Virus record (IMG/VR): IMGVR_UViG_3300028558_000016 | Span: 372,001 to 436,000 of that record | DNA: 64,000 bases | Strand: one strand, 5' to 3' | Shown: one piece after another, positions 14,605 to 50,622 of the stretch | How positions within the stretch are numbered: the first letter of the stretch is position 1 | How the letters are laid out: each line of letters begins with the position of its first letter | Notes under the pieces: generated by a model | Database searches by the model: none | Seen by the model: only the letters and a program-made list of their open reading frames with translations | Told to the model about the DNA's origin: nothing | Position numbers and translations under genes: made by a program

Positions 14605-14691
14605 GGGTAAGTTGCCGTAGTGGCCGAACGGTCCAGACTGTTAATCTGGTGAGAGCAATCTCCGTCGTGGGTTCGAATCCCACCTCGCCCT
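14605..14691 (+). tRNA. tRNA-Asn(GTT), long variable arm
   Basis: CCAGA-CTGTTAA-TCTGG; variable arm GAGAGCAATCTC. Confidence 0.8.
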
Positions 14692-14698
14692 CAACTTT

Positions 14699-15431: not shown

Positions 15432-15505
15432 GGGACATTCCATACTAATTGGTAAGTCACTCGGTTGTAACCCGAGAAATGGGGGTTCGAGTCCCTCATG
15501 TCCCA
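15432..15505 (+). tRNA. tRNA-Tyr(GTA), short variable loop
   Basis: CTCGG-TTGTAAC-CCGAG; GGGACAT/ATGTCCC; irregular D region. Confidence 0.75.
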
Positions 15506-15506
15506 C

Positions 15507-15590
15507 TGTACAGTATGCAAATTGGCGAAGCGAACAGATTTTGGATCTGTTGGAGTAATCCCGCTGCAGGTTCGAGCCCTGCCTGTATAA
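15507..15590 (+). tRNA. tRNA-Gln(TTG), long variable arm
   Basis: ACAGA-TTTTGGA-TCTGT; TGTACAG/CTGTATA. Confidence 0.78.
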
Positions 15591-15604
15591 CTAAAATTAA
15601 AAAC

Positions 15605-29028: not shown

Positions 29029-29441
29029 AGAACAAGACATTAATAAAATACGCGAGAACCCTTTTGAAAGAATTGCTTGCTAAATGCTCTGAGCCGCAAC
29101 AGTTGTTATTTAAGAGAATGTACAATCATAAGAATTTGGAAGCGCCAATCAATGAAGCAGTTGATCAGATGGAACCCGATAAACTGGATTGGGCTGTGAC
29201 TCAGGTAGAAGAAACGATTAAAAAGAACAATAGATTTTTAACTTGCAAAAAAGATTTGTTTAAATCAACATACCAATCTAATGCTTTCATAGATGGAAAA
29301 ATATATGAAGTTTCCTTTGATAAGAACTACGAGGAAAATGAAAATGAAATTTGGATAAAAGATGAAACAGGCAGACCGTTCACATTCACGAAAGTAAATT
29401 CATTTGGAATGTATAAAGTCGAAGATTATTTTGAATTATGA
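29025..29441 (+). CDS. hypothetical protein
   Basis: ORF track. Confidence 0.6.
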   Translation: MKNKTLIKYARTLLKELLAKCSEPQQLLFKRMYNHKNLEAPINEAVDQMEPDKLDWAVTQVEETIKKNNRFLTCKKDLFKSTYQSNAFIDGKIYEVSFDKNYEENENEIWIKDETGRPFTFTKVNSFGMYKVEDYFEL

Positions 29442-30844
29442 GTTACGATAAATACATATCAACAACACTTCCATACGCGAACTCTGTTCCGCACATGGGT
29501 CATGCTCTTGAACTAATTCAAGGGGATGCGCTCAAGCATTTTTTCGAATCTATAAAGAATGAAAAAGTATTCTTCAATATAGGTGTTGACGAACATGGAT
29601 TAAAGGTCTATACAAAGGCACAAGAACTTGGAATTGACACCAAGCTTTATTTGAATGAACTGACGCATAAATGGCAGGACTTTTGTAAGTTGTTCCAAAT
29701 TGATTATGACAACTTCTATAGAACAACGAGTCTTGTTCACATAGCAAGAACCCAAAGATTTTGGACTAAGTGTCTCGAGAGAGGAGATCTTTACAAGAAG
29801 AAGTATTCTGGAAAATATTGCGCTGGATGTGAATCATTTAAAACTGAAGCAGATCTCGTAGATGGAAAATGCCCAGACCATAATATCGAACCCTCTATAA
29901 TAGAAGAAGAGAATTGGTTCTTTAGAATTTCTAAGCATAAAGGATTATTATATGGATGGTTGAAGAGCAATCCTGATTTTTTATCGCCAAGGTCTAAAAC
30001 TTCCGAACTTGAAAACATAATACTTCAATCTGAAGATATTTCAGTTTCTCGTTTAAAGGTAAATGTTCCATGGGGAGTTGGAGTTCCAAATGATGAAGAT
30101 CAAGTCATTTATGTTTGGTTTGAAGCTCTTCTTAATTATATCTTCGCTGTGGATGATTTTAATGATCAATACTTCATACAAATATGTGGTCCAGACAATT
30201 TAAGATTTCAGGGATCATTATTCCAAAATATTTTGATTTCTGCAAATATTCCAAACACCAAGAAATTATTGGTTCATGGAACTGTTCTCGATGCCGAAGG
30301 TAAAAAGATGTCCAAGTCACTTGGTAACGTGGTTGATCCAATTGATCAATTAAACAAATATGGATTGGATGCTGTAAGATATTACACGCTTGCAGGTTTA
30401 TCCACCTATGGTGATGGAGCGTGGTCTGAAAAGGATTTAATAAAAACCTACAATTCTGAATTGGCAGATACTTATGGAAATTTATTGGCAAGGGTTCTTC
30501 ATTTGATAGACACCAAGAATGTTGATGTAATTCCACCAACAGCAGAACATAAGAGACACGTTGATTCAATAGTGTATTCAGTTCACACCAATTGGGAATT
30601 CTATGAAATCCAAAAAGCAATAAAGGAAACTGGCTGGATAATCAATTTCGGAAATAAGTACATGAATGATGAAAAACCGTGGGAAAAAGATAAAGATTAC
30701 GTGCAAATTCTAAGCAATCTGTACTATTCTTTATGTGAAGCAAATAAGTTATATTTACCTGTTTTATCATCTAAAACGTGGTCACTGATAGAAGAAGCAT
30801 TGAAGATAAAAAAGAAAGTAATAATATTTCAGAAAATAGTATAA
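29438..30844 (+). CDS. metG: methionyl-tRNA synthetase
   Basis: TTLPYANSVPHMGH, GVDEHG, YVWFEALLNY, KMSKSLGN. Confidence 0.95.
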   Translation: MSYDKYISTTLPYANSVPHMGHALELIQGDALKHFFESIKNEKVFFNIGVDEHGLKVYTKAQELGIDTKLYLNELTHKWQDFCKLFQIDYDNFYRTTSLVHIARTQRFWTKCLERGDLYKKKYSGKYCAGCESFKTEADLVDGKCPDHNIEPSIIEEENWFFRISKHKGLLYGWLKSNPDFLSPRSKTSELENIILQSEDISVSRLKVNVPWGVGVPNDEDQVIYVWFEALLNYIFAVDDFNDQYFIQICGPDNLRFQGSLFQNILISANIPNTKKLLVHGTVLDAEGKKMSKSLGNVVDPIDQLNKYGLDAVRYYTLAGLSTYGDGAWSEKDLIKTYNSELADTYGNLLARVLHLIDTKNVDVIPPTAEHKRHVDSIVYSVHTNWEFYEIQKAIKETGWIINFGNKYMNDEKPWEKDKDYVQILSNLYYSLCEANKLYLPVLSSKTWSLIEEALKIKKKVIIFQKIV

Positions 30845-41914: not shown

Positions 41915-41997
41915 ACGTCGGTGTCCGAGCGGTCAAAGGTAGCGGTCTCCAAAACCGCGGAGTTTCTCCATCGTGGGTTCGAATCCTACCCGGCGTG
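41915..41997 (+). tRNA. tRNA-Trp(CCA), long variable arm
   Basis: GCGGT-CTCCAAA-ACCGC; G73; GGAGTTTCTCC arm. Confidence 0.88.
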
Positions 41998-42018
41998 CAA
42001 AAATTAAAAGAAGAAAAC

Positions 42019-42373: not shown

Positions 42374-42463
42374 GGTGCAGGTATCCAAGGGGTTGAAGGG
42401 ACCAGGCTGTGGACCTGGTTGAAGCGAAAGCTGAACACGCGAGTTCGAATCTCGTCTTGCACC
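42374..42463 (+). tRNA. tRNA-His(GTG), long variable arm
   Basis: G-1:C73; CCAGG-CTGTGGA-CCTGG; AGCGAAAGCT arm. Confidence 0.85.
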
Positions 42464-42468
42464 CACAT

Positions 42469-43935: not shown

Positions 43936-44020
43936 GGGCGTGTACCGGTGGAATCTTATACATTCTATACCCGTAGTCTGGTCGTTGAAAACGGGGGTTC
44001 AAATCCCTCCACGCCTACCA
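43936..44020 (+). ncRNA. D-arm-less rearranged tRNA-like RNA, anticodon TAT (Ile)
   Basis: GGGCGTG/CACGCCT+ACCA; GGAAT-CTTATAC-ATTCT directly after the acceptor strand. Confidence 0.6.
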
Positions 44021-44052
44021 AATTTAGCTTCATGAATTATGATATATAGTTC

Positions 44053-44589
44053 ATGAAGCATTTACAGACATATCAGCAGCTTAACGAGAGCATGATAGAT
44101 TCCAATTTGAAGAAGGAATTTGCATTTACCCTAAAACAAATGGATGAAATTTCCAATGCAATACTCAATGCAAAAGATTTCAAGAACAGGGTAAAGCTTA
44201 TGAAGAAAGAAAACCCAGATATTGGAAAAGCTATGGGAGATTACAAAGAATATCTTGATCTCGCCACCAAGGTGCAAAAAATAGTAAAACAAATTAGATC
44301 AAAAGGACTTTCTTCAGACAGAAGAAAAGCGACTAAACAATTGAGAGCCATCCAGGGGTTTTCTGGTACACTTAAAACAGTTTTCGATAATTTGAATAAG
44401 TTTGATAAAAAAACCAAAAAGGGTTTTGAAAGCAACGAAGGAATAGCAACCATCATTGGAAATACATTAAGAAATATATTGACTGGTCAGTTCATAGTTA
44501 ACATATTAAAAACCATAAAAGGAAATTTAATGGATTCACAAGCAGAACTAACTACTGTGCAAGATGTATTTGATATAAAAGATTATTAA
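44053..44589 (+). CDS. hypothetical protein with capsid-targeting-like N-terminus
   Basis: MKHLQTYQQLNES; GATATATAG upstream. Confidence 0.6.
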   Translation: MKHLQTYQQLNESMIDSNLKKEFAFTLKQMDEISNAILNAKDFKNRVKLMKKENPDIGKAMGDYKEYLDLATKVQKIVKQIRSKGLSSDRRKATKQLRAIQGFSGTLKTVFDNLNKFDKKTKKGFESNEGIATIIGNTLRNILTGQFIVNILKTIKGNLMDSQAELTTVQDVFDIKDY

Positions 44590-44590
44590 T

Positions 44591-44830
44591 ATGCAAAAGA
44601 TTAAGGACGCTTTAAAATGGATGGTTTGTACCAAGCTTGGATGGTTGATAATATCATTCTTATGGATTGGTGTGTTCATGATAATAAACGATAACATAGA
44701 ATCTGGATGGGCCTTTTGGGTTGCAATTCCAGGATTCGCATACATCATAGGTTTATTCCTTGTCATGATGTTTTATGCGGTAAAGAATACGATAGGAGAC
44801 ATAAAAGAAAATAGAAATGAAAAATCTTAA
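44591..44830 (+). CDS. small membrane protein
   Basis: two TM segments. Confidence 0.6.
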   Translation: MQKIKDALKWMVCTKLGWLIISFLWIGVFMIINDNIESGWAFWVAIPGFAYIIGLFLVMMFYAVKNTIGDIKENRNEKS

Positions 44831-45113
44831 AAAGTTCGGTGAGTTAAACGAGGGTGGATTAGGTTATGAAAACAACAAAACGCTTCCTCCATCTGGGACA
44901 CACATAAAATATGTTGCTGACACAACAGATCCAAAGACCAAAAAAATTCTCAAGATTATTTGGAATTCATGGGACGAGGCAAAAAGGAAACAGATGCTTA
45001 ACAAAATGGGACACAGCGAAAAGTATTTTGATGCTTCTTTTGAAGACCTGACAGGAGAGATCCAAGGAAAGATCGTAATGCTTGATGCCTCATTGCCAGA
45101 AAACAAGCGATAA
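44817..45113 (+). CDS. hypothetical protein with capsid-targeting-like N-terminus
   Basis: MKNLKKFGELNEG. Confidence 0.6.
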   Translation: MKNLKKFGELNEGGLGYENNKTLPPSGTHIKYVADTTDPKTKKILKIIWNSWDEAKRKQMLNKMGHSEKYFDASFEDLTGEIQGKIVMLDASLPENKR

Positions 45114-45115
45114 AA

Positions 45116-45190
45116 TAAATTTTTTAGTTTCAAATATAATACCTATATTTGTAAAAGATTAAGAAACAAAGAAAACCGCAAGGTATATAA
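45116..45190 (+). promoter_or_regulatory. conserved operon promoter block
   Basis: TTTTTTAGTTTCAAATATAATACCTATATTTG...GAAACAAA...GGTATATAAG. Confidence 0.65.
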
Positions 45191-45197
45191 GATACAA

Positions 45198-45281
45198 ATG
45201 ATGAATACAGTAAATATTACCCGAATTATTAGGATTAGACGCAGATCAGCGACTCGCCTGGGTAGTATTATTTTATCATGA
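45198..45281 (+). CDS. attenuator leader peptide, Ile/Arg-rich (27 aa)
   Basis: MMNTVNITRIIRIRRRSATRLGSIILS*. Confidence 0.85.
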   Translation: MMNTVNITRIIRIRRRSATRLGSIILS

Positions 45282-45345
45282 AAGTTTTAAGGATTTAGAA
45301 AACTATGAATGGAATAAGCCCAGGACGAAAGTTCTGGGCTTTTTT
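45257..45345 (+). terminator. attenuator: antiterminator and intrinsic terminator
   Basis: CCTGGGT(45257-63) can pair GCCCAGG(45318-24) of AAGCCCAGGAC-GAAA-GTTCTGGGCTT-TTTT. Confidence 0.85.
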
Positions 45346-45395
45346 CATTTTAAAAATATCGAAAATGAAATGGTTTAAGAAATTACAGGAAATAA

Positions 45396-45479
45396 CGGCA
45401 CGTACTCAGACCATCCTGATAAGATGGATAACTTGTAGCGGTGTTGCAAACGTGGGTTCAAATCCCTCCGTGCCGACCA
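45396..45479 (+). ncRNA. D-arm-less rearranged tRNA-like RNA, anticodon GAT (Ile)
   Basis: CGGCACG/CGTGCCG+ACCA; CCATC-CTGATAA-GATGG 8 nt after the acceptor strand. Confidence 0.65.
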
Positions 45480-45760
45480 TGAAAAATATGTTGTATAAAA
45501 CCGCAAGAAGGTCGTTGTCAAAAAAGACAAACAGACATTTGAGACAAACCACGTTTCTCTACGAGATGTGTGGAAATGATTTTCAAAAGCTGTTAAAGGT
45601 GGAAGAGAGATTGAAAAATTATTTTCTCTTTTATTGTCCAGGCGATCCTGAAGAAGTGGAAAAAGTTTTGGCATTGCCTGAAAAATTTTTATTGAACGAT
45701 AAGAAGTGGCAAGATGGATCAAAATATTTTTGCTTAGAAGAATTTTACGACGGAATGTAG
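45479..45760 (+). CDS. hypothetical protein
   Basis: MKNMLYKT...; stop TAG lies inside the next tRNA. Confidence 0.55.
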   Translation: MKNMLYKTARRSLSKKTNRHLRQTTFLYEMCGNDFQKLLKVEERLKNYFLFYCPGDPEEVEKVLALPEKFLLNDKKWQDGSKYFCLEEFYDGM

Positions 45761-45824
45761 CTCAGTTGGTTAGAGCACCCGCCTGATACGCGGTAGGTCG
45801 GCAGTTCGAATCTGCCCATTCCGA
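45751..45824 (+). tRNA. tRNA-Ile(GAT)
   Basis: CCGC-CTGATAC-GCGG; CGGAATG/CATTCCG. Confidence 0.9.
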
Positions 45825-45827
45825 CAG

Positions 45828-45973
45828 ATGTCCTTAGCTCAGTGGTTAGAGTATTATGCTGATAAAAGGTTTTAGATCTTGTAATGGAAAAATATCACGG
45901 CTCATAACCGTGGTACCAAAACAAAAATTTAAAATGCACATAAGGGTCGGTGGTTCGAATCCATCAGGACATG
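45828..45973 (+). tRNA. tRNA (GAT) with about 73-nt insert carrying a nested CAT anticodon arm
   Basis: ATGTCCT/AGGACAT; TTATG-CTGATA[insert with CACGG-CTCATAA-CCGTG]A-CATAA. Confidence 0.65.
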
Positions 45974-45982
45974 CATAAAAAT

Positions 45983-46056
45983 GCCCGCGTAGCTCAACTG
46001 GATAGAGCACCTGACTACGGATCAGGAGGTTTAGAGTTCGAATCTCTACGTGGGTA
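45983..46056 (+). tRNA. tRNA-Arg(ACG)
   Basis: CCTGA-CTACGGA-TCAGG. Confidence 0.92.
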
Positions 46057-46060
46057 CATT

Positions 46061-46134
46061 GGTTTTGTAGCTCAATTGGATAGAGCAATTCCGTCCTAAG
46101 GAAAAGGTTATAGGTTCGAGTCCTATCAAGATCA
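46061..46134 (+). tRNA. tRNA-Arg(CCT)
   Basis: TTCC-GTCCTAA-GGAA. Confidence 0.85.
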
Positions 46135-46139
46135 CAAAT

Positions 46140-46212
46140 GCCTGCGTAGCTCAGTGGACAGAGCGCCGGTCTTCGGAACCGGGCGTCGGGAGTTCGAATC
46201 TCTCCGTGGGTA
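46140..46212 (+). tRNA. tRNA-Arg(TCG)
   Basis: CCGGT-CTTCGGA-ACCGG. Confidence 0.9.
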
Positions 46213-46236
46213 CTGAAGTAAAATGGAATTAAATAT

Positions 46237-46326
46237 GCCCGTGTAGCCGAGGAAGTTTTCTAAACTTTTATCCGTAATTGGAGCTGCGTCTCACGACTAA
46301 TGGGGGTTCGAATCCCTCCACGGGTA
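46237..46326 (+). ncRNA. D-arm-less rearranged tRNA-like RNA, anticodon TCT (Arg)
   Basis: GCCCGTG/CACGGGT; GAAGT-TTTCTAA-ACTTT right after the acceptor strand. Confidence 0.62.
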
Positions 46327-46341
46327 CTTAAAATTAAAGTT

Positions 46342-47505
46342 ATGAAAATTGATATTGATAAAATAAAACAGATCCCCAAAGAGATTTCGGAAGAATTTGG
46401 GATGTGCGTCTATGGACCAATCTCAGATGAGATTAAGGCATGGATGGAATTCCATGGTATGCAATCGCAAAACATGGGAAATTATACAAACATCTATACA
46501 GATAAAAACATTATTGATCTGTTCAATAAACCAGAACCATTTGAATACATCGATGGGTTCAGTCCAAACCTAAACAAGAATCTTCACATTGGACACTTCT
46601 CAAATTTAGTTCTTGCAAAGGCTTTCGTCTCTCTTGGAATAGCAAAGAAGACTGTGGCAATATTGGGAGACACGTTAGAAGGGGATGTTTCAAAGGAAGA
46701 TGCGTTGAACAACTACAATGAGATATGTGAGAAATTCTCATACCCCGTAGATAAGATGTTCATGGCTTCTGAAATGGAATCTGATTACAACCTCGTGGAT
46801 GGTGTTCATGAATATGAAGGAACCAAAGTGTTCTATCTTGATACGCCATTAGTTGGAATCAAAAGCGATGGGTCAACAACATATTTCTATCAGGACGTTG
46901 CATTGGCACAAAAATTAAATGCTCCAACATTATATCTTACAGGAAGCGAACAGAACGGACATTTCAACAGCTTAAAGGAAATGTTTCCTAAAATAAAGCA
47001 CATTGGACTTGGACTTGTAAAAGCAAAAGGAGGAAAGATGTCAAGCAGACTCGGAAATGTTATTTGGATGCAAGATGTCATCGATGAAATGATGAGCAAC
47101 TTTCAAGACGAAAAAGTGTGCTATAATGTTTTTGCAGGATTTATTTTGAAATCAACTCCTAAGTCTGAAAAGAACATAGACATATATCAATTGGACAATC
47201 CATTGAATTCACCTGGATTGTACTTAAGCTATACGTTAGCAAAACTAAAAAGCGCTGGAGTGAAATGTGAAGGAAAAACATTCACCTCTCAAGATCTTCA
47301 ATTCAAATACATGAAGGCCTTGAACTCTCTTTCTCCAAATATTTTGCTTGAAGGTTTAATTGATCATGCAAAGAAGATAAGCGGTTTATACATCACTCAC
47401 AAGATAAAAGATAATGCGGTGAACCAGTCCATGTTTGAAATATTGGGTTCAGATTTATTATTAGGAATGAGCCTCCTGGGTTTATTTGATGTTGACAAGG
47501 TTTAA
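46342..47505 (+). CDS. argS: compact arginyl-tRNA synthetase
   Basis: FSPNLNKNLHIGH, KSDGSTTYFYQDVA, EQNGHF, KMSSRLGN, YLSYTLAK. Confidence 0.9.
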   Translation: MKIDIDKIKQIPKEISEEFGMCVYGPISDEIKAWMEFHGMQSQNMGNYTNIYTDKNIIDLFNKPEPFEYIDGFSPNLNKNLHIGHFSNLVLAKAFVSLGIAKKTVAILGDTLEGDVSKEDALNNYNEICEKFSYPVDKMFMASEMESDYNLVDGVHEYEGTKVFYLDTPLVGIKSDGSTTYFYQDVALAQKLNAPTLYLTGSEQNGHFNSLKEMFPKIKHIGLGLVKAKGGKMSSRLGNVIWMQDVIDEMMSNFQDEKVCYNVFAGFILKSTPKSEKNIDIYQLDNPLNSPGLYLSYTLAKLKSAGVKCEGKTFTSQDLQFKYMKALNSLSPNILLEGLIDHAKKISGLYITHKIKDNAVNQSMFEILGSDLLLGMSLLGLFDVDKV

Positions 47506-47562: not shown

Positions 47563-48519
47563 ATGGCAACCAAAACATCTAAAGCCGCAACAGGAACCGT
47601 GAAAGCACGAACAGCAGGAAGAAAAGCAACGACATCAACAAAGACACCAATGAAAGCAGAAACTACATTGGAACCAAAAAAGGCCTCGAAGATTAAAATA
47701 AGTGGAAAAGAAGTTACATTGAACGGGTATTTTAAAATTGAATTGGGAACCTTTTCGATTTTAAAGCACAACATCCGAAACAACATAAGCACTCTTTTAA
47801 TAGGTCCAACAGGACTTGGAAAAACAGATGTCGCAGTTAACATTGCGTCTGTGCTCGATGTTCCTATAACCATATTTGATATGGGAACGATGACTGACCC
47901 CATCATGGGACTTGTTGGAACTCACGTCATAGAGGTTAAAGATGGAAAAACATATTCTGAATTCAAGAAAAGCAGATTCTCTGACGTCATCCAAAAACCA
48001 GGAATAGTTTTATTGGATGAGGTCAATCGTGCTGCATCAGCCGCTAACAACTTATTATTTCCTTGTTTAGATTTCAGAAGAGAGCTTCCAATGGAATATT
48101 CGTTTGGAGATACTAAGCCAATTCCAATTCATCCTAAATGTGTTTTCTTTGCAACGGCAAATATAGGATCTCAGTATACCGGAACTCACAAGCTTGACAG
48201 AGCATTAATCGATAGGTTCATGATTATTGCAGTTGATAGTCTCAACACTCAACAAATTATGTCCACGTTAGAAGTGACTCATTCTAAATTAAGTGAGACT
48301 GACAGAAAAAAGATTGTTGACATTTACAACAAGATAAACAAAGAGCATGACGATTTCAAAATAGGTTTCAATTTGTCAATACGACATTTGAAAACTGTTG
48401 CGACACTTGTGCAAAACAAGTTCACGATATATGATGCGTATTATGCAATATGCAAAGGACTTGGTGGACCAGAAGGATTAAAAGCTATTGAATCGATCTT
48501 AAGCACCTCTAAAAAATGA
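47563..48519 (+). CDS. MoxR/CbbQ-like AAA+ ATPase
   Basis: GPTGLGKT, LLDEVNR, ATAN, LDRALIDRF. Confidence 0.9.
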   Translation: MATKTSKAATGTVKARTAGRKATTSTKTPMKAETTLEPKKASKIKISGKEVTLNGYFKIELGTFSILKHNIRNNISTLLIGPTGLGKTDVAVNIASVLDVPITIFDMGTMTDPIMGLVGTHVIEVKDGKTYSEFKKSRFSDVIQKPGIVLLDEVNRAASAANNLLFPCLDFRRELPMEYSFGDTKPIPIHPKCVFFATANIGSQYTGTHKLDRALIDRFMIIAVDSLNTQQIMSTLEVTHSKLSETDRKKIVDIYNKINKEHDDFKIGFNLSIRHLKTVATLVQNKFTIYDAYYAICKGLGGPEGLKAIESILSTSKK

Positions 48520-50272: not shown

Positions 50273-50545
50273 ATGTTCTTTGACACGATACAAAATATTC
50301 TTCTCGCAAAGAGAAAGAGAAAAGAGTATGGATATACAGCAGTAGGAGAATTGCTTAGAAATGTTCATGGAACTGAAGCAAAAATAATAGATGTTATTTT
50401 TAATCCGGCTGGATCCATTATAAAATTTGCTTACGATGATGACATGTTCTATTATACAACAATAGAGAAGCTCCAGACAAAATATTTTAAGATGATTGAA
50501 TATTCTTCTGGTAGAATGTCAAATGAAGAATATGGAAATGAATAG
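50273..50545 (+). CDS. hypothetical protein
   Basis: ORF track. Confidence 0.55.
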   Translation: MFFDTIQNILLAKRKRKEYGYTAVGELLRNVHGTEAKIIDVIFNPAGSIIKFAYDDDMFYYTTIEKLQTKYFKMIEYSSGRMSNEEYGNE

Positions 50546-50618
50546 GTCCCGTAGCTCAGCTGGATAGAGCACAGGTTTTCTAAACCTGCGGTCCTTGGTT
50601 CGAATCCAAGCGGGATCA
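50545..50618 (+). tRNA. tRNA-Arg(TCT)
   Basis: CAGGT-TTTCTAA-ACCTG; GGTCCCG/CGGGATC. Confidence 0.92.
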
Positions 50619-50622
50619 CAAA

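What the first reader, a model, noticed from the sequence alone, without database searches (positions are those of the whole stretch)
43936..46326. Three tRNA-like RNAs with rearranged architecture: no D arm before the anticodon, D-loop-like sequence after it
43936 (TAT), 45396 (GAT) and 46237 (TCT) each have a 7-bp acceptor stem, a linker of about 8 nt, a 5-bp/7-nt anticodon arm, then a 24-35-nt segment with a D-loop-like TAG..GG/TAATTGG, then a normal T arm. Their anticodons (Ile, Ile, Arg) match the Ile/Arg module, which argues against random decay. They may be non-canonical functional tRNAs or decoys for anticodon nucleases.
Basis: partly seen in the sequence, partly recalled or inferred. 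Interest (0 to 1): 0.72.

Follow-up and report, generated by a model that had tools for sequence, protein, structure and literature searches.

The report
Phage tRNAs with a rewired D arm
The three odd RNAs are real members of a large, mostly unannotated family of phage isoleucine and arginine tRNAs in which the anticodon arm sits inside a D-stem-like helix and the D-loop follows it; no such tRNA architecture was found described for bacteria or their viruses.

Summary
Window 43936-44020 (anticodon UAU), 45396-45479 (GAU) and 46237-46326 (UCU) each have a 7-bp acceptor stem, no D hairpin, a 5-bp/7-nt anticodon arm, a D-loop-like stretch after it, and a normal T arm. They are not decay products. 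All are Arg (UCU, ACG, UCG, CCU, GCG) or Ile (UAU, GAU, CAU). Unannotated copies lie in cultured phages such as Pseudomonas phages PA11 and TC6.

Covariation shows that nt 9/10-14/15 pair with two stretches 3' of the anticodon arm. These two stretches are separated by a conserved bulge, U-A-R-Y-N-G-G-(A in Arg, U in Ile). The R of the bulge covaries with the last base before the T stem, like the Levitt pair R15:Y48 (194 of 196).

The features known to matter for charging are kept, and the anticodons match codons the phages use heavily. The best reading is working elongator tRNAs with a re-wired core (about 0.75). Expression, charging and the reason for the architecture are untested. I found no prior description.

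The parts
43936..44020 (+). c1: non-canonical tRNA-Ile(UAU) gene, with discriminator A and encoded CCA
   Evidence: 84.7 bits with family model R3, which was built without it. Coordinates checked. Missed by ARAGORN.
43944..43948 (+). c1: 5' strand of the enclosing helix. A9 and C10 form X; C11, G12 and G13 form Y.
   Evidence: Pairs with 43984-43985 (X3') and 43971-43973 (Y3'). These columns covary in the family.
43950..43966 (+). c1: anticodon arm, 5 bp with a 7-nt loop; anticodon TAT at 43957-43959
43974..43983 (+). c1: D-loop-like bulge, TAGTCTGGTC. G43976 is the R15 analogue and pairs in the family pattern with C43992, the Y48 analogue.
   Evidence: R:Y covariation in 194 of 196 family members. 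MI scan.
43986..43992 (+). c1: A-rich variable-loop-like connector, TGAAAAC
   Evidence: Conserved tail UUGAAAAY in the Ile type
43993..44009 (+). c1: T arm, GGGGG/CCCTC with loop TTCAAAT
45396..45479 (+). c2: non-canonical tRNA-Ile(GAU) gene, with discriminator A and encoded CCA
   Evidence: Rfam tRNA 37.4 bits with the D arm deleted. 69.7 bits with R3.
45404..45409 (+). c2: 5' strand of the enclosing helix. A9 and C10 form X; T11 is unpaired; C12, A13 and G14 form Y.
   Evidence: X3' is GT at 45443-45444. Y3' lies within CTTG at 45432-45435, with one bulged T. Same register as the 8-nt-linker GAU subclass.
45411..45427 (+). c2: anticodon arm CCATC/GATGG with loop CTGATAA; anticodon GAT at 45418-45420
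45436..45442 (+). c2: D-loop-like bulge, TAGCGGT. G45438 is the R15 analogue and pairs in the family pattern with C45451.
45452..45468 (+). c2: T arm. The second pair of the stem is a U-U mismatch.
46237..46326 (+). c3: non-canonical tRNA-Arg(UCU) gene. Position 1:72 is G.U; the discriminator is A; no CCA is encoded.
   Evidence: Rfam 34.7 bits. 68.8 bits with R2, which was built without it.
46244..46251 (+). c3: 5' strand of the enclosing helix. TAGC forms X and CGAG forms Y.
   Evidence: X3' is GCTG at 46283-46286. Y3' is TCCG at 46271-46274. Family columns 10:48, 11:47 and 13:37 covary.
46252..46268 (+). c3: anticodon arm GAAGT/ACTTT with loop TTTCTAA; anticodon TCT at 46259-46261
46275..46282 (+). 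c3: D-loop-like bulge, TAATTGGA. It has the same AAYUGGA core as the D-loop of the canonical tRNA-Arg at 45983-46057. A46277 is the R15 analogue and pairs in the family pattern with T46301.
46287..46301 (+). c3: variable-region analogue carrying an extra small hairpin, GTC-TCAC-GAC, at 46288-46297
   Evidence: Most relatives have only AAAAU here, and a few others carry hairpin inserts at the same place.
46302..46318 (+). c3: T arm
45751..45825 (+). Context: canonical tRNA-Ile(GAU)
45983..46213 (+). Context: three canonical tRNA-Arg genes (ACG, CCU, UCG) directly upstream of c3
46342..47505 (+). Context: compact ArgRS-like ORF of 387 aa with HIGH and KMSSR motifs, directly downstream of c3
   Evidence: PF00750 at 33 bits and TIGR00456 at 48 bits, the latter far below its cut-off. 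Weak match to PDB ArgRS chains.

Best explanation
c1, c2 and c3 are genes for elongator tRNAs that decode AUA (Ile, UAU), AUY (Ile, GAU) and AGR (Arg, UCU). They belong to a widespread phage-borne tRNA family with a re-wired core.

Architecture, 5' to 3':
1. A 7-bp acceptor stem, followed by U8 and A9.
2. Nucleotides 9/10-14/15, which form the 5' strand of a helix.
3. The anticodon arm, nested inside that helix.
4. The first half of the helix's 3' strand, called Y here.
5. A conserved 7-10-nt bulge with a D-loop sequence, U-A-R-Y-N-G-G-A/U.
6. The second half of the 3' strand, called X here.
7. A 5-8-nt A-rich, variable-loop-like connector ending in Y.
8. A standard T arm and the acceptor 3' strand.

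In effect the anticodon arm has moved from between positions 26 and 44 into the 5' half of the D arm.

Shown here:
- The helices X and Y.
- A Levitt-type R15:Y48 covariation between the bulge and the connector.
- Restriction of the family to Arg and Ile.
- Wide distribution in phages.

Inferred:
- The transposed D-loop still builds an elbow with the T loop, so that the molecule keeps a usable distance between anticodon and CCA end.
- It is processed, and charged by IleRS or ArgRS. That would be the host's enzyme, or for Arg possibly the compact ArgRS-like enzyme encoded next to c3.
- It works on the ribosome to supply codons that the AT-rich phages use heavily.

Why the core is re-wired is unknown.
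For: Family size and spread:
- Homologs of each type occur in related huge phages LR756502 and LR745206.

Structure:
- On gapless alignments not fitted to any structure, X pair 10:48 is GC 25, AU 13, CG 2, UA 1, and 11:47 is CG 30, AU 3, UA 3, UG 3.
- Y pair 13:37 is GC 35, AU 3, CG 2. In the Ile type 12:37 is AU 12, GC 11, and 13:36 is GC 12, UA 6, AU 4.
- 93-96% of cells are paired, against 64-68% in shuffles and about 40% when partners are slid.
- A structure-blind mutual-information scan ranks these pairs among the stem pairs.
- The R15:Y48-like pair is A-U 144, G-C 50, with 2 exceptions (Fisher 2e-44). In the subset not constrained by my search pattern, Ile has 69 of 69 paired.

Features that fit charging and decoding:
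- The discriminator is A in 69 of 69 Ile members.
- The base after GG, the A20 position that is an ArgRS identity element by established knowledge, is A in 31 of 32 unbiased Arg members and U in 58 of 69 Ile members.
- The anticodon loops are canonical, with U33 and R37. CCA is encoded in 82 of 196.

Use in the genomes:
- Models built without the window's sequences score the three at 69-85 bits. They are the only members in the 482-kb genome.
- This genome uses AUA for 38% of Ile codons and AGA for 68% of Arg codons.
- Phage PA11 (45% GC; its relative TC6 is 45% GC against 66% for the host, PMC6209634) uses AGR for 38% of Arg codons. A family member with anticodon UCU is the only tRNA-like gene found in it.
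- In 164 of 196 cases no canonical tRNA with the same anticodon lies in the fetched locus. The members sit in tRNA arrays, with a median of 9 other tRNAs per locus.
Against: - There is no evidence of expression, end maturation or aminoacylation. No RNA run could be listed.
- X and Y are short. RNAalifold predicts only the three classical helices on the same alignment. Single-sequence folds are no more stable than shuffles, with z from -0.65 to -1.2.
- The 3D fold is not modelled. The bulge leaves and re-enters the helix at the same level, so reaching the T loop needs a geometry unlike that of canonical tRNA.
- In this genome GAU and UCU also have canonical copies (45751-45825 and 50545-50619), so c2 and c3 are redundant here.
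- Some relatives look damaged, for example LR745206 387977-388055, which has an aberrant T arm.
- Collection was by motifs taken from Arg and Ile members, which biases the family's apparent limits. A motif-free parser still found almost only Arg and Ile.
Confidence: 0.75

Rival explanations
1. The RNAs are made but are not used for decoding. They act as decoys, sponges or inhibitors for host tRNA-targeting nucleases, synthetases or modification enzymes.
For: - The architecture departs strongly from what the bacterial translation apparatus is known to accept. PMC11551756 states that all known bacterial tRNAs are canonical.
- c2 and c3 have canonical isoacceptors in the same genome.
- The restriction to two amino acids could mirror specific nucleases.
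Against: - Acceptor and T arms, the discriminator A73, the A20-like base and encoded CCA are all conserved. A decoy for an anticodon nuclease would not need these.
- The member is usually the only gene with that anticodon in the fetched stretch.
- It is the sole tRNA-like gene in PA11, whose AGR use is high.
- No nuclease or other partner was identified.
Confidence: 0.13
2. The genes are precursors that are cut and rejoined into a canonical cloverleaf tRNA, through an intron, a permuted gene or a split gene.
For: - A neighbouring tRNA gene (45828-45973) carries a 74-nt insert in its anticodon loop.
- Some phages with members encode RNA ligases, for example Boevelstad, where the ligase gene lies next to the tRNA gene.
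Against: - Removing any single contiguous segment does not give the canonical order. The anticodon arm would have to be moved past the D-loop segment.
- Positions 10-15 covary with both flanks of the D-loop-like bulge, which shows selection on the structure as encoded.
- The acceptor strands are already at the two ends.
Confidence: 0.03
3. The secondary structure is the one that the reader and the Rfam alignment imply: a D-armless tRNA with an unpaired 8-nt connector, as in mitochondrial tRNA-Ser, and a long unstructured or hairpin variable region.
For: - The Rfam tRNA alignment takes this form.
- The minimum-free-energy fold of c2 draws a 7-bp hairpin in the 3' segment.
- RNAalifold gives no X or Y helix.
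Against: - The connector covaries with the 3' segment at four or five positions.
- The c2 hairpin is not conserved in relatives.
Confidence: 0.04
4. The three loci are decaying tRNA pseudogenes, or chance tRNA-like sequence.
For: - ARAGORN does not call them.
- Single-sequence folding energies are unremarkable.
Against: - There are hundreds of homologs, with compensatory changes in all five helices and in a tertiary pair.
- The sequence is identical in contigs from other sequencing runs of rhizosphere samples.
Confidence: 0.02

Closest known systems
Metazoan mitochondrial D-armless tRNAs (tRNA-Ser(AGY/UCU) of mammals and nematodes; armless tRNAs of Romanomermis); reviewed in PMC7609411, structures in PMC9427863
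   Same: There is no D hairpin between the acceptor and anticodon stems. The molecule is a three-way rather than a four-way junction. It probably needs a non-standard angle between its arms.
   Different: In the mitochondrial tRNAs the D arm is replaced by a short unpaired connector, the D-loop/T-loop elements are lost, and dedicated mitochondrial factors have co-evolved. Here the connector is base-paired. A full D-loop sequence, the GG and a Levitt-type pair are kept but transposed 3' of the anticodon arm. The T arm is fully canonical, and the setting is bacterial translation in phage-infected cells.
Canonical bacterial and phage tRNA-Arg and tRNA-Ile (Rfam RF00005)
   Same: 7-bp acceptor stem, 5/7/5 anticodon arm, 5/7/5 T arm with a UUCRAAU loop, U8 and A9, the D-loop sequence A-A-Y-U-G-G-A, R15:Y48-type covariation, a 5-nt variable-like connector, and A73 in Ile.
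   Different: The order of the elements differs. The anticodon arm lies between D-stem positions 11 and 14. D-stem pairs 12:23 and 13:22 are replaced by the Y helix that leads to the anticodon arm. Nothing sits between the analogues of positions 26 and 44.
Type II tRNAs (Leu, Ser, bacterial Tyr) with a long variable arm
   Same: Length of 80-90 nt. c3 and a few relatives carry an extra hairpin just before the T arm.
   Different: Type II tRNAs have a normal D arm, and the extra arm is the only addition. In this family the long 3' segment is mostly the transposed D-loop plus helix strands.
tRNA-Sec, tRNA-Pyl and allo-tRNAs (non-canonical cloverleaves in bacteria; PMC7609411)
   Same: Bacterial-world tRNAs that depart from the standard cloverleaf and still function.
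   Different: Those change stem lengths (8/5, 9/4, 6-bp D stem) or loop sizes but keep the order of the arms.
Permuted, split and intron-containing tRNA genes of archaea and red algae
   Same: The order of tRNA parts in the gene is rearranged.
   Different: There the mature tRNA is canonical after processing. Here covariation acts on the rearranged order itself.
Phage tRNAs proposed to escape host anticodon nucleases through altered anticodon loops (T5-like phages; recalled from my own knowledge, not read here)
   Same: A phage tRNA differs from the host's and may serve counter-defence.
   Different: Those are canonical cloverleaves with point changes. No link to defence is shown for the present family.

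Membership tests
tRNA (Rfam RF00005, canonical cloverleaf) | 7-bp acceptor stem closing the molecule, with a discriminator base | tested here: met
   All three have it. In the family, 99-100% of cells are paired and all 7 pairs covary.
tRNA (Rfam RF00005, canonical cloverleaf) | D hairpin (stem 10-13:22-25 closed by the D loop) between positions 9 and 26 | tested here: not met
   The Rfam alignment deletes the D arm. Positions 10-15 pair with segments that lie 3' of the anticodon arm.
tRNA (Rfam RF00005, canonical cloverleaf) | Anticodon arm of 5 bp with a 7-nt loop, U33 and purine 37 | tested here: met
tRNA (Rfam RF00005, canonical cloverleaf) | T arm of 5 bp with a UUCRAAU loop, abutting the acceptor 3' strand | tested here: met
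tRNA (Rfam RF00005, canonical cloverleaf) | Tertiary Levitt pair R15:Y48 | tested here: met
   The analogue is present: the bulge R and the last connector base co-vary in 194 of 196 members. The geometry was not tested.
tRNA (Rfam RF00005, canonical cloverleaf) | Score at or above the Rfam gathering threshold of 29 bits | tested here: inconclusive
   c2 scores 37.4 and c3 34.7, so both pass. c1 gives no tRNA match. Relatives score 33-40 bits, against 45-75 for canonical neighbours.
tRNA (functional definition) | Aminoacylated and used on the ribosome | not testable with these tools
   No RNA run was listed. Support is indirect only: identity nucleotides and codon usage.
Mitochondrial-type D-armless tRNA | D arm replaced by a short unpaired connector, with loss of the D-loop/T-loop elements | tested here: not met
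   The connector is paired. The D-loop-like GG bulge and the canonical T loop are retained.
Type II (long variable arm) tRNA | Normal D arm plus a base-paired extra arm between positions 44 and 48 | tested here: not met
   There is no D hairpin. Only c3 and a few relatives have a small hairpin in the connector.
Intron-containing or permuted tRNA gene | Removing one segment, or circular permutation, restores the canonical order | tested here: not met
   By inspection of the order of elements. Covariation supports the structure as encoded.

The most novel reading that the evidence does not exclude
The re-wired core is an adaptation, not a neutral oddity. By removing the canonical D hairpin while keeping the identity nucleotides for ArgRS and IleRS, phages make Arg and Ile decoders that escape enzymes which recognise the standard D-arm and elbow shape. 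Such enzymes would be host, or the phage's own, tRNA-cleaving or tRNA-inactivating enzymes. Translation of AGR-rich and AUA-rich phage genes could then continue when cellular tRNAs are attacked. It would also mean that bacterial ribosomes, EF-Tu, RNase P and two class I synthetases naturally accept a tRNA whose arms are in a different order.
Probability: 0.3. Interest if true: 0.92.

Novelty: new variant of a known kind. Interest (0 to 1): 0.86.

Why it matters
- **Challenge to a textbook view.** Every tRNA of bacteria and their viruses is held to be a canonical cloverleaf. PMC11551756 says so explicitly. The 2020 review of non-canonical tRNAs (PMC7609411) lists D-armless tRNAs only for mitochondria and never mentions phages.
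- **Scale of the exception.** This family has hundreds of members with a different order of arms, conserved by covariation.
- **Missed by annotation.** ARAGORN overlaps only 15 of the 196 members. GenBank records of cultured phages leave the locus unannotated or place a protein ORF over it. The paper on phage TC6 reports "no intact tRNA genes" (PMC6209634). tRNA counts and codon-supply analyses of phage genomes are therefore systematically short for Arg and Ile.
- **Directly testable.** Members exist in cultured lytic Pseudomonas phages, so expression, charging, structure and fitness effects can be measured.
- **Wider uses.** A naturally accepted alternative tRNA scaffold would interest work on synthetase recognition, ribosome tolerance and orthogonal-tRNA engineering.

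Tried and rejected
- **Synteny through the downstream ORF.** My first call used the wrong frame. The corrected search found no close relative in IMG/VR.
- **MAFFT alignment of the first three or four sequences.** It misaligned the anticodon arms. I replaced it with a single-sequence covariance model and later with gapless length classes.
- **My first pairing idea for the Ile type.** I proposed that ACC of the linker pairs with the GGU of the bulge. I dropped it because position 10 covaries with the base four nucleotides before the AAAAY tail, not with the GG.
- **A T-loop pseudoknot, UUGAA with UUCAA.** I considered it and dropped it. The T-loop variant (UUCAAAU or UUCGAAU) does not track the presence of the UUGAA tail, and the connecting loops would be too short. 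This is inference only.
- **RNAalifold on the 42-sequence alignment.** It returned only the three classical helices.
- **RNA evidence.** No RNA run was listed for the region, so transcripts are untested.
- **A link between the family and the compact ArgRS-like gene.** Homologs turned up near Arg tRNA genes in only 2 other loci, and one of those has canonical Arg tRNAs. There is no general association.
- **Cellular origin.** A scan of 185,579 species' genomes gave only 36 loci. Most are MAG contigs, and the loci I examined lie inside 13-25-gene tRNA arrays.
- **Literature.** Seven searches found no description of this architecture.
- **Not attempted.** 3D modelling and complex prediction, because no tool here returns an RNA tertiary model.


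Full report
**What is in the window.** The window is part of a 482,156-bp single-contig phage genome with 36.8% GC. It is distantly related to the 634-735-kb uncultured phages LR756501-4 and LR745206, and the sequence occurs in rhizosphere metagenomes. ARAGORN finds 55 tRNAs in the genome and 25 in the window, but none at the three sites. Each has a 7-bp acceptor stem and 7-8 nt in place of a D arm. A 5-bp/7-nt anticodon arm follows (UAU, GAU, UCU), then 24-33 nt containing UAG..GG or UAAUUGG, then a normal T arm. c1 and c2 encode CCA. The Rfam tRNA model aligns c2 and c3 in this way, with the D arm deleted, at 37.4 and 34.7 bits. c1 gives only a weak tmRNA-3'-end match. Contigs from four other sequencing runs carry identical DNA over all three genes.

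**Relatives.** A single-sequence covariance model of c2 found clear homologs in LR756502 and LR745206. A tRNA-Arg(UCG) of the same build had already turned up in LR745206. A parser that needs only an acceptor stem, an anticodon hairpin 6-9 nt after it, a segment of at least 19 nt and a T arm extracted 196 distinct members from 147 loci. By anticodon they are UCU 59, ACG 38, UAU 36, GAU 31, UCG 23, CCU 5, CAU 2 and GCG 2. A parser with no sequence motifs, applied to everything ARAGORN does not call, still gave almost only Arg and Ile. Its exceptions were two tRNA-Tyr(GUA)-like genes of a different rearranged type and one family member with anticodon UCA.

**Cultured phages and cellular genomes.** Members also occur in cultured phages: Pseudomonas phages PA11, TC6, IME180, PSA11 and Boevelstad, and Maribacter phage Panino. 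In those records the locus is unannotated or lies under a protein ORF. The TC6 paper states that no intact tRNA gene was predicted (PMC6209634). Only 36 loci matched among 185,579 species' genomes. Most are on MAG contigs, and the three loci I scanned lie inside arrays of 13-25 tRNA genes.

**The real secondary structure.** The "linker" is not single-stranded. I used gapless alignments of equal-length members, which are not fitted to any structure.
- *Arg type, 42 sequences.* Positions 10 and 11 covary with the two bases that follow the GG-containing stretch. Pair 10:48 is GC 25, AU 13, CG 2, UA 1. Pair 11:47 is CG 30, AU 3, UA 3, UG 3.
- *Arg type, continued.* Positions 12-14 pair with the bases just 5' of the conserved U-A-R. 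Pair 12:38 is invariant C-G, and 13:37 is GC 35, AU 3, CG 2, GU 1.
- *Ile type, 23 sequences.* Pair 12:37 is AU 12, GC 11. Pair 13:36 is GC 12, UA 6, AU 4. Pair 10:48 is CG 20, AU 1, UA 1.
- *Controls.* Overall 93-96% of cells are paired, against 64-68% in shuffles and about 40% when partners are slid by 1-3 columns.
- *Blind check.* A mutual-information scan that knows no structure ranks 10:48, 13:37, 11:47 and 14:36 among the classical stem pairs.

**Order of the parts.** The anticodon arm is therefore nested inside a helix. The helix's 5' strand is nt 9/10-15. Its 3' strand is split by a bulge of 7-10 nt with the consensus U-A-R-Y-N-G-G-(A/U). In the Arg type the bulge has the same AAYUGGA core as the D loop of the window's canonical tRNA-Arg. 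After the helix comes UG plus AAAAU in Arg, or UUG plus AAAAY in Ile, and then the T arm. c3 and a few relatives carry an extra small hairpin there, as a variable arm would.

**A conserved tertiary pair.** The R of the bulge, the position-15 analogue, covaries with the last base before the T stem, the position-48 analogue. The counts are A-U 144, G-C 50, with 2 exceptions (Fisher 2e-44). In the 101 sequences not constrained by my third search pattern, Ile shows G-C 44 and A-U 25 with no exception. This is the signature of the Levitt pair. It argues that the transposed D-loop still takes part in a tRNA-like tertiary core. The three window genes obey all of these rules. Under models built without them they score 84.7, 69.7 and 68.8 bits, well above canonical tRNAs at 36 bits or less. 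They are the only members in this genome.

**What they most likely do.** The parts known to matter for processing, charging and elongation are kept.
- The acceptor and T arms are canonical.
- The anticodon loops have U33 and a purine at 37.
- The discriminator is A in all 69 Ile members.
- The base after GG is A in 31 of 32 unbiased Arg members and U in 58 of 69 Ile members. A20 is the classical ArgRS identity element, which I take from established knowledge.
- The use of ACG rather than GCG for CGN codons matches bacterial practice, which is an inference.

Codon use also fits. This genome uses AUA for 38% of Ile codons and AGA for 68% of Arg codons. PA11 has 45% GC and uses AGR for 38% of Arg codons, and the family member is its only tRNA-like gene. 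In 164 of 196 cases no canonical gene with the same anticodon lies in the fetched stretch. I therefore rate "working elongator tRNAs with a re-wired core" at about 0.75. A non-decoding role (decoy or sponge) is about 0.13, and the other rivals are a few percent each.

**What is not shown.** Expression, charging and the 3D fold are untested. The bulge leaves and re-enters the helix at one level. Contact with the T loop would therefore need the long arm to lean towards the T arm. A rough estimate suggests an angle that could still give an anticodon-to-CCA distance of about 75 Å, but that is inference only. Why only Arg and Ile occur, and why the fold exists at all, is open. Escape from tRNA-targeting enzymes is an attractive idea with no evidence here.

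**Comparison with known kinds.** The nearest analogues are mitochondrial D-armless tRNAs. Those have an unpaired connector and have lost the D-loop/T-loop elements, so the defining feature is not met (membership table). tRNA-Sec, tRNA-Pyl, allo-tRNAs and type II tRNAs keep the order of the arms. Permuted and split genes yield canonical mature tRNAs. Seven literature searches and two reviews gave no description of this arrangement. A 2024 paper states that all known bacterial tRNAs are canonical (PMC11551756). The searched library lacks most subscription journals, so a prior report cannot be excluded.

**Verdict.** The feature is real and strongly conserved. It is a new structural variant of tRNA, widespread in phages and largely missed by annotation. 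Interest is 0.86.

Noticed in passing
window 45828-45973 (+): This is a tRNA-Ile(GAU)-like gene with normal acceptor, D and T arms (Rfam 48.7 bits). It carries a 74-nt insert after position 37 of the anticodon loop. The insert folds into a long hairpin capped by a second anticodon-like loop, CUCAUAA. It is too short for a group I intron, and no copy was found in the other fetched loci.
   Followed up: partly
window 14605-14692, 15507-15591, 41915-41998, 42375-42464; also G000 5778-5869(-), 6974-7059(-), 7373-7464(-), 124757-124843: Eight tRNAs for amino acids that normally have short variable loops (Asn, Gln, Trp, His, Asn, Met, Lys, Glu) are 84-92 nt long, with type-II-like extra arms. Most lie next to a canonical isoacceptor. 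This looks like a second class of expanded tRNAs in the same genome.
   Followed up: partly
window 46342-47505 (+): A 387-aa ArgRS-like ORF lies directly after c3. It has HIGH (LHIGH) and KMSSR motifs, but only the catalytic core is recognisable (PF00750 at 33 bits; TIGR00456 at 48 bits against a cut-off of 262). No D-loop-binding N-terminal domain and no DALR anticodon-binding domain were detected by sequence. Homologs of 48-53% identity lie next to Arg tRNA genes in LR756504 (L003) and in IMG/VR locus L239.
   Followed up: partly
window 29438-30844 (+); G000 321206-322213 (+): The genome also encodes a MetRS-like protein of 468 aa (PF09334, 246 bits). A second class I synthetase-like ORF of about 504 aa abuts the Leu/Ser tRNA cluster.
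   Followed up: no
window 2278-2351 (+); G000 358020-358092 (-), 368276-368349 (+): There are three tRNAs with anticodon CUA, which would act as amber suppressors, in one phage genome. This hints at reading of TAG in some genes. I did not examine it, and I assumed no alternative code.
   Followed up: no
G000 5549-5634 (-), about 126300-126400 (+), 8318-8377 (-), 7775-7863 (-); window about 15432-15505: Several further tRNA-like genes are missed by ARAGORN. One is a tRNA-Gly(UCC) with a GCGAAAGC hairpin inserted in its D loop. Another is a tRNA-Cys(GCA) with an enlarged D loop. There is also a short-variable-loop GUA (Tyr-like) gene.
   Followed up: no
L027 (- strand, parser start 1491) and L084 (+ strand, start 4913): Two related tRNA-Tyr(GUA)-like genes lack a 5' D hairpin. 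Their 10-nt connector contains GUCAC, which is complementary to a GUGAC 3' of the anticodon arm. They differ by compensatory changes in the acceptor and anticodon stems. This may be a second, independent arm-order rearrangement.
   Followed up: no
L249 (+ strand, start 440): This family member has the Arg-type bulge (UAAUUGGA) but the anticodon UCA, so it is a possible UGA-reading derivative.
   Followed up: no
NC_007808.1 (PA11) about 47672-47751; TC6 MG676466.1 44630-44702: The annotated HNH/homing-endonuclease ORFs overlap the non-canonical tRNA-Arg(UCU) gene at their 3' ends. The ORF ends or the gene map in these records may need revision.
   Followed up: partly
L257, L263, L267, L270, L281, L283, L285 (Blastocatellia MAGs); L268, L278 (Methyloligellaceae): Conserved arrays of tRNA genes in MAGs of two bacterial lineages include a family member: Arg UCU in the Blastocatellia and Arg ACG in the Methyloligellaceae. 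The three loci I scanned hold 13-25 tRNA genes each. One array sits on a 4.2-Mb chromosome contig. Whether these arrays are prophage, plasmid or cellular was not resolved.
   Followed up: partly
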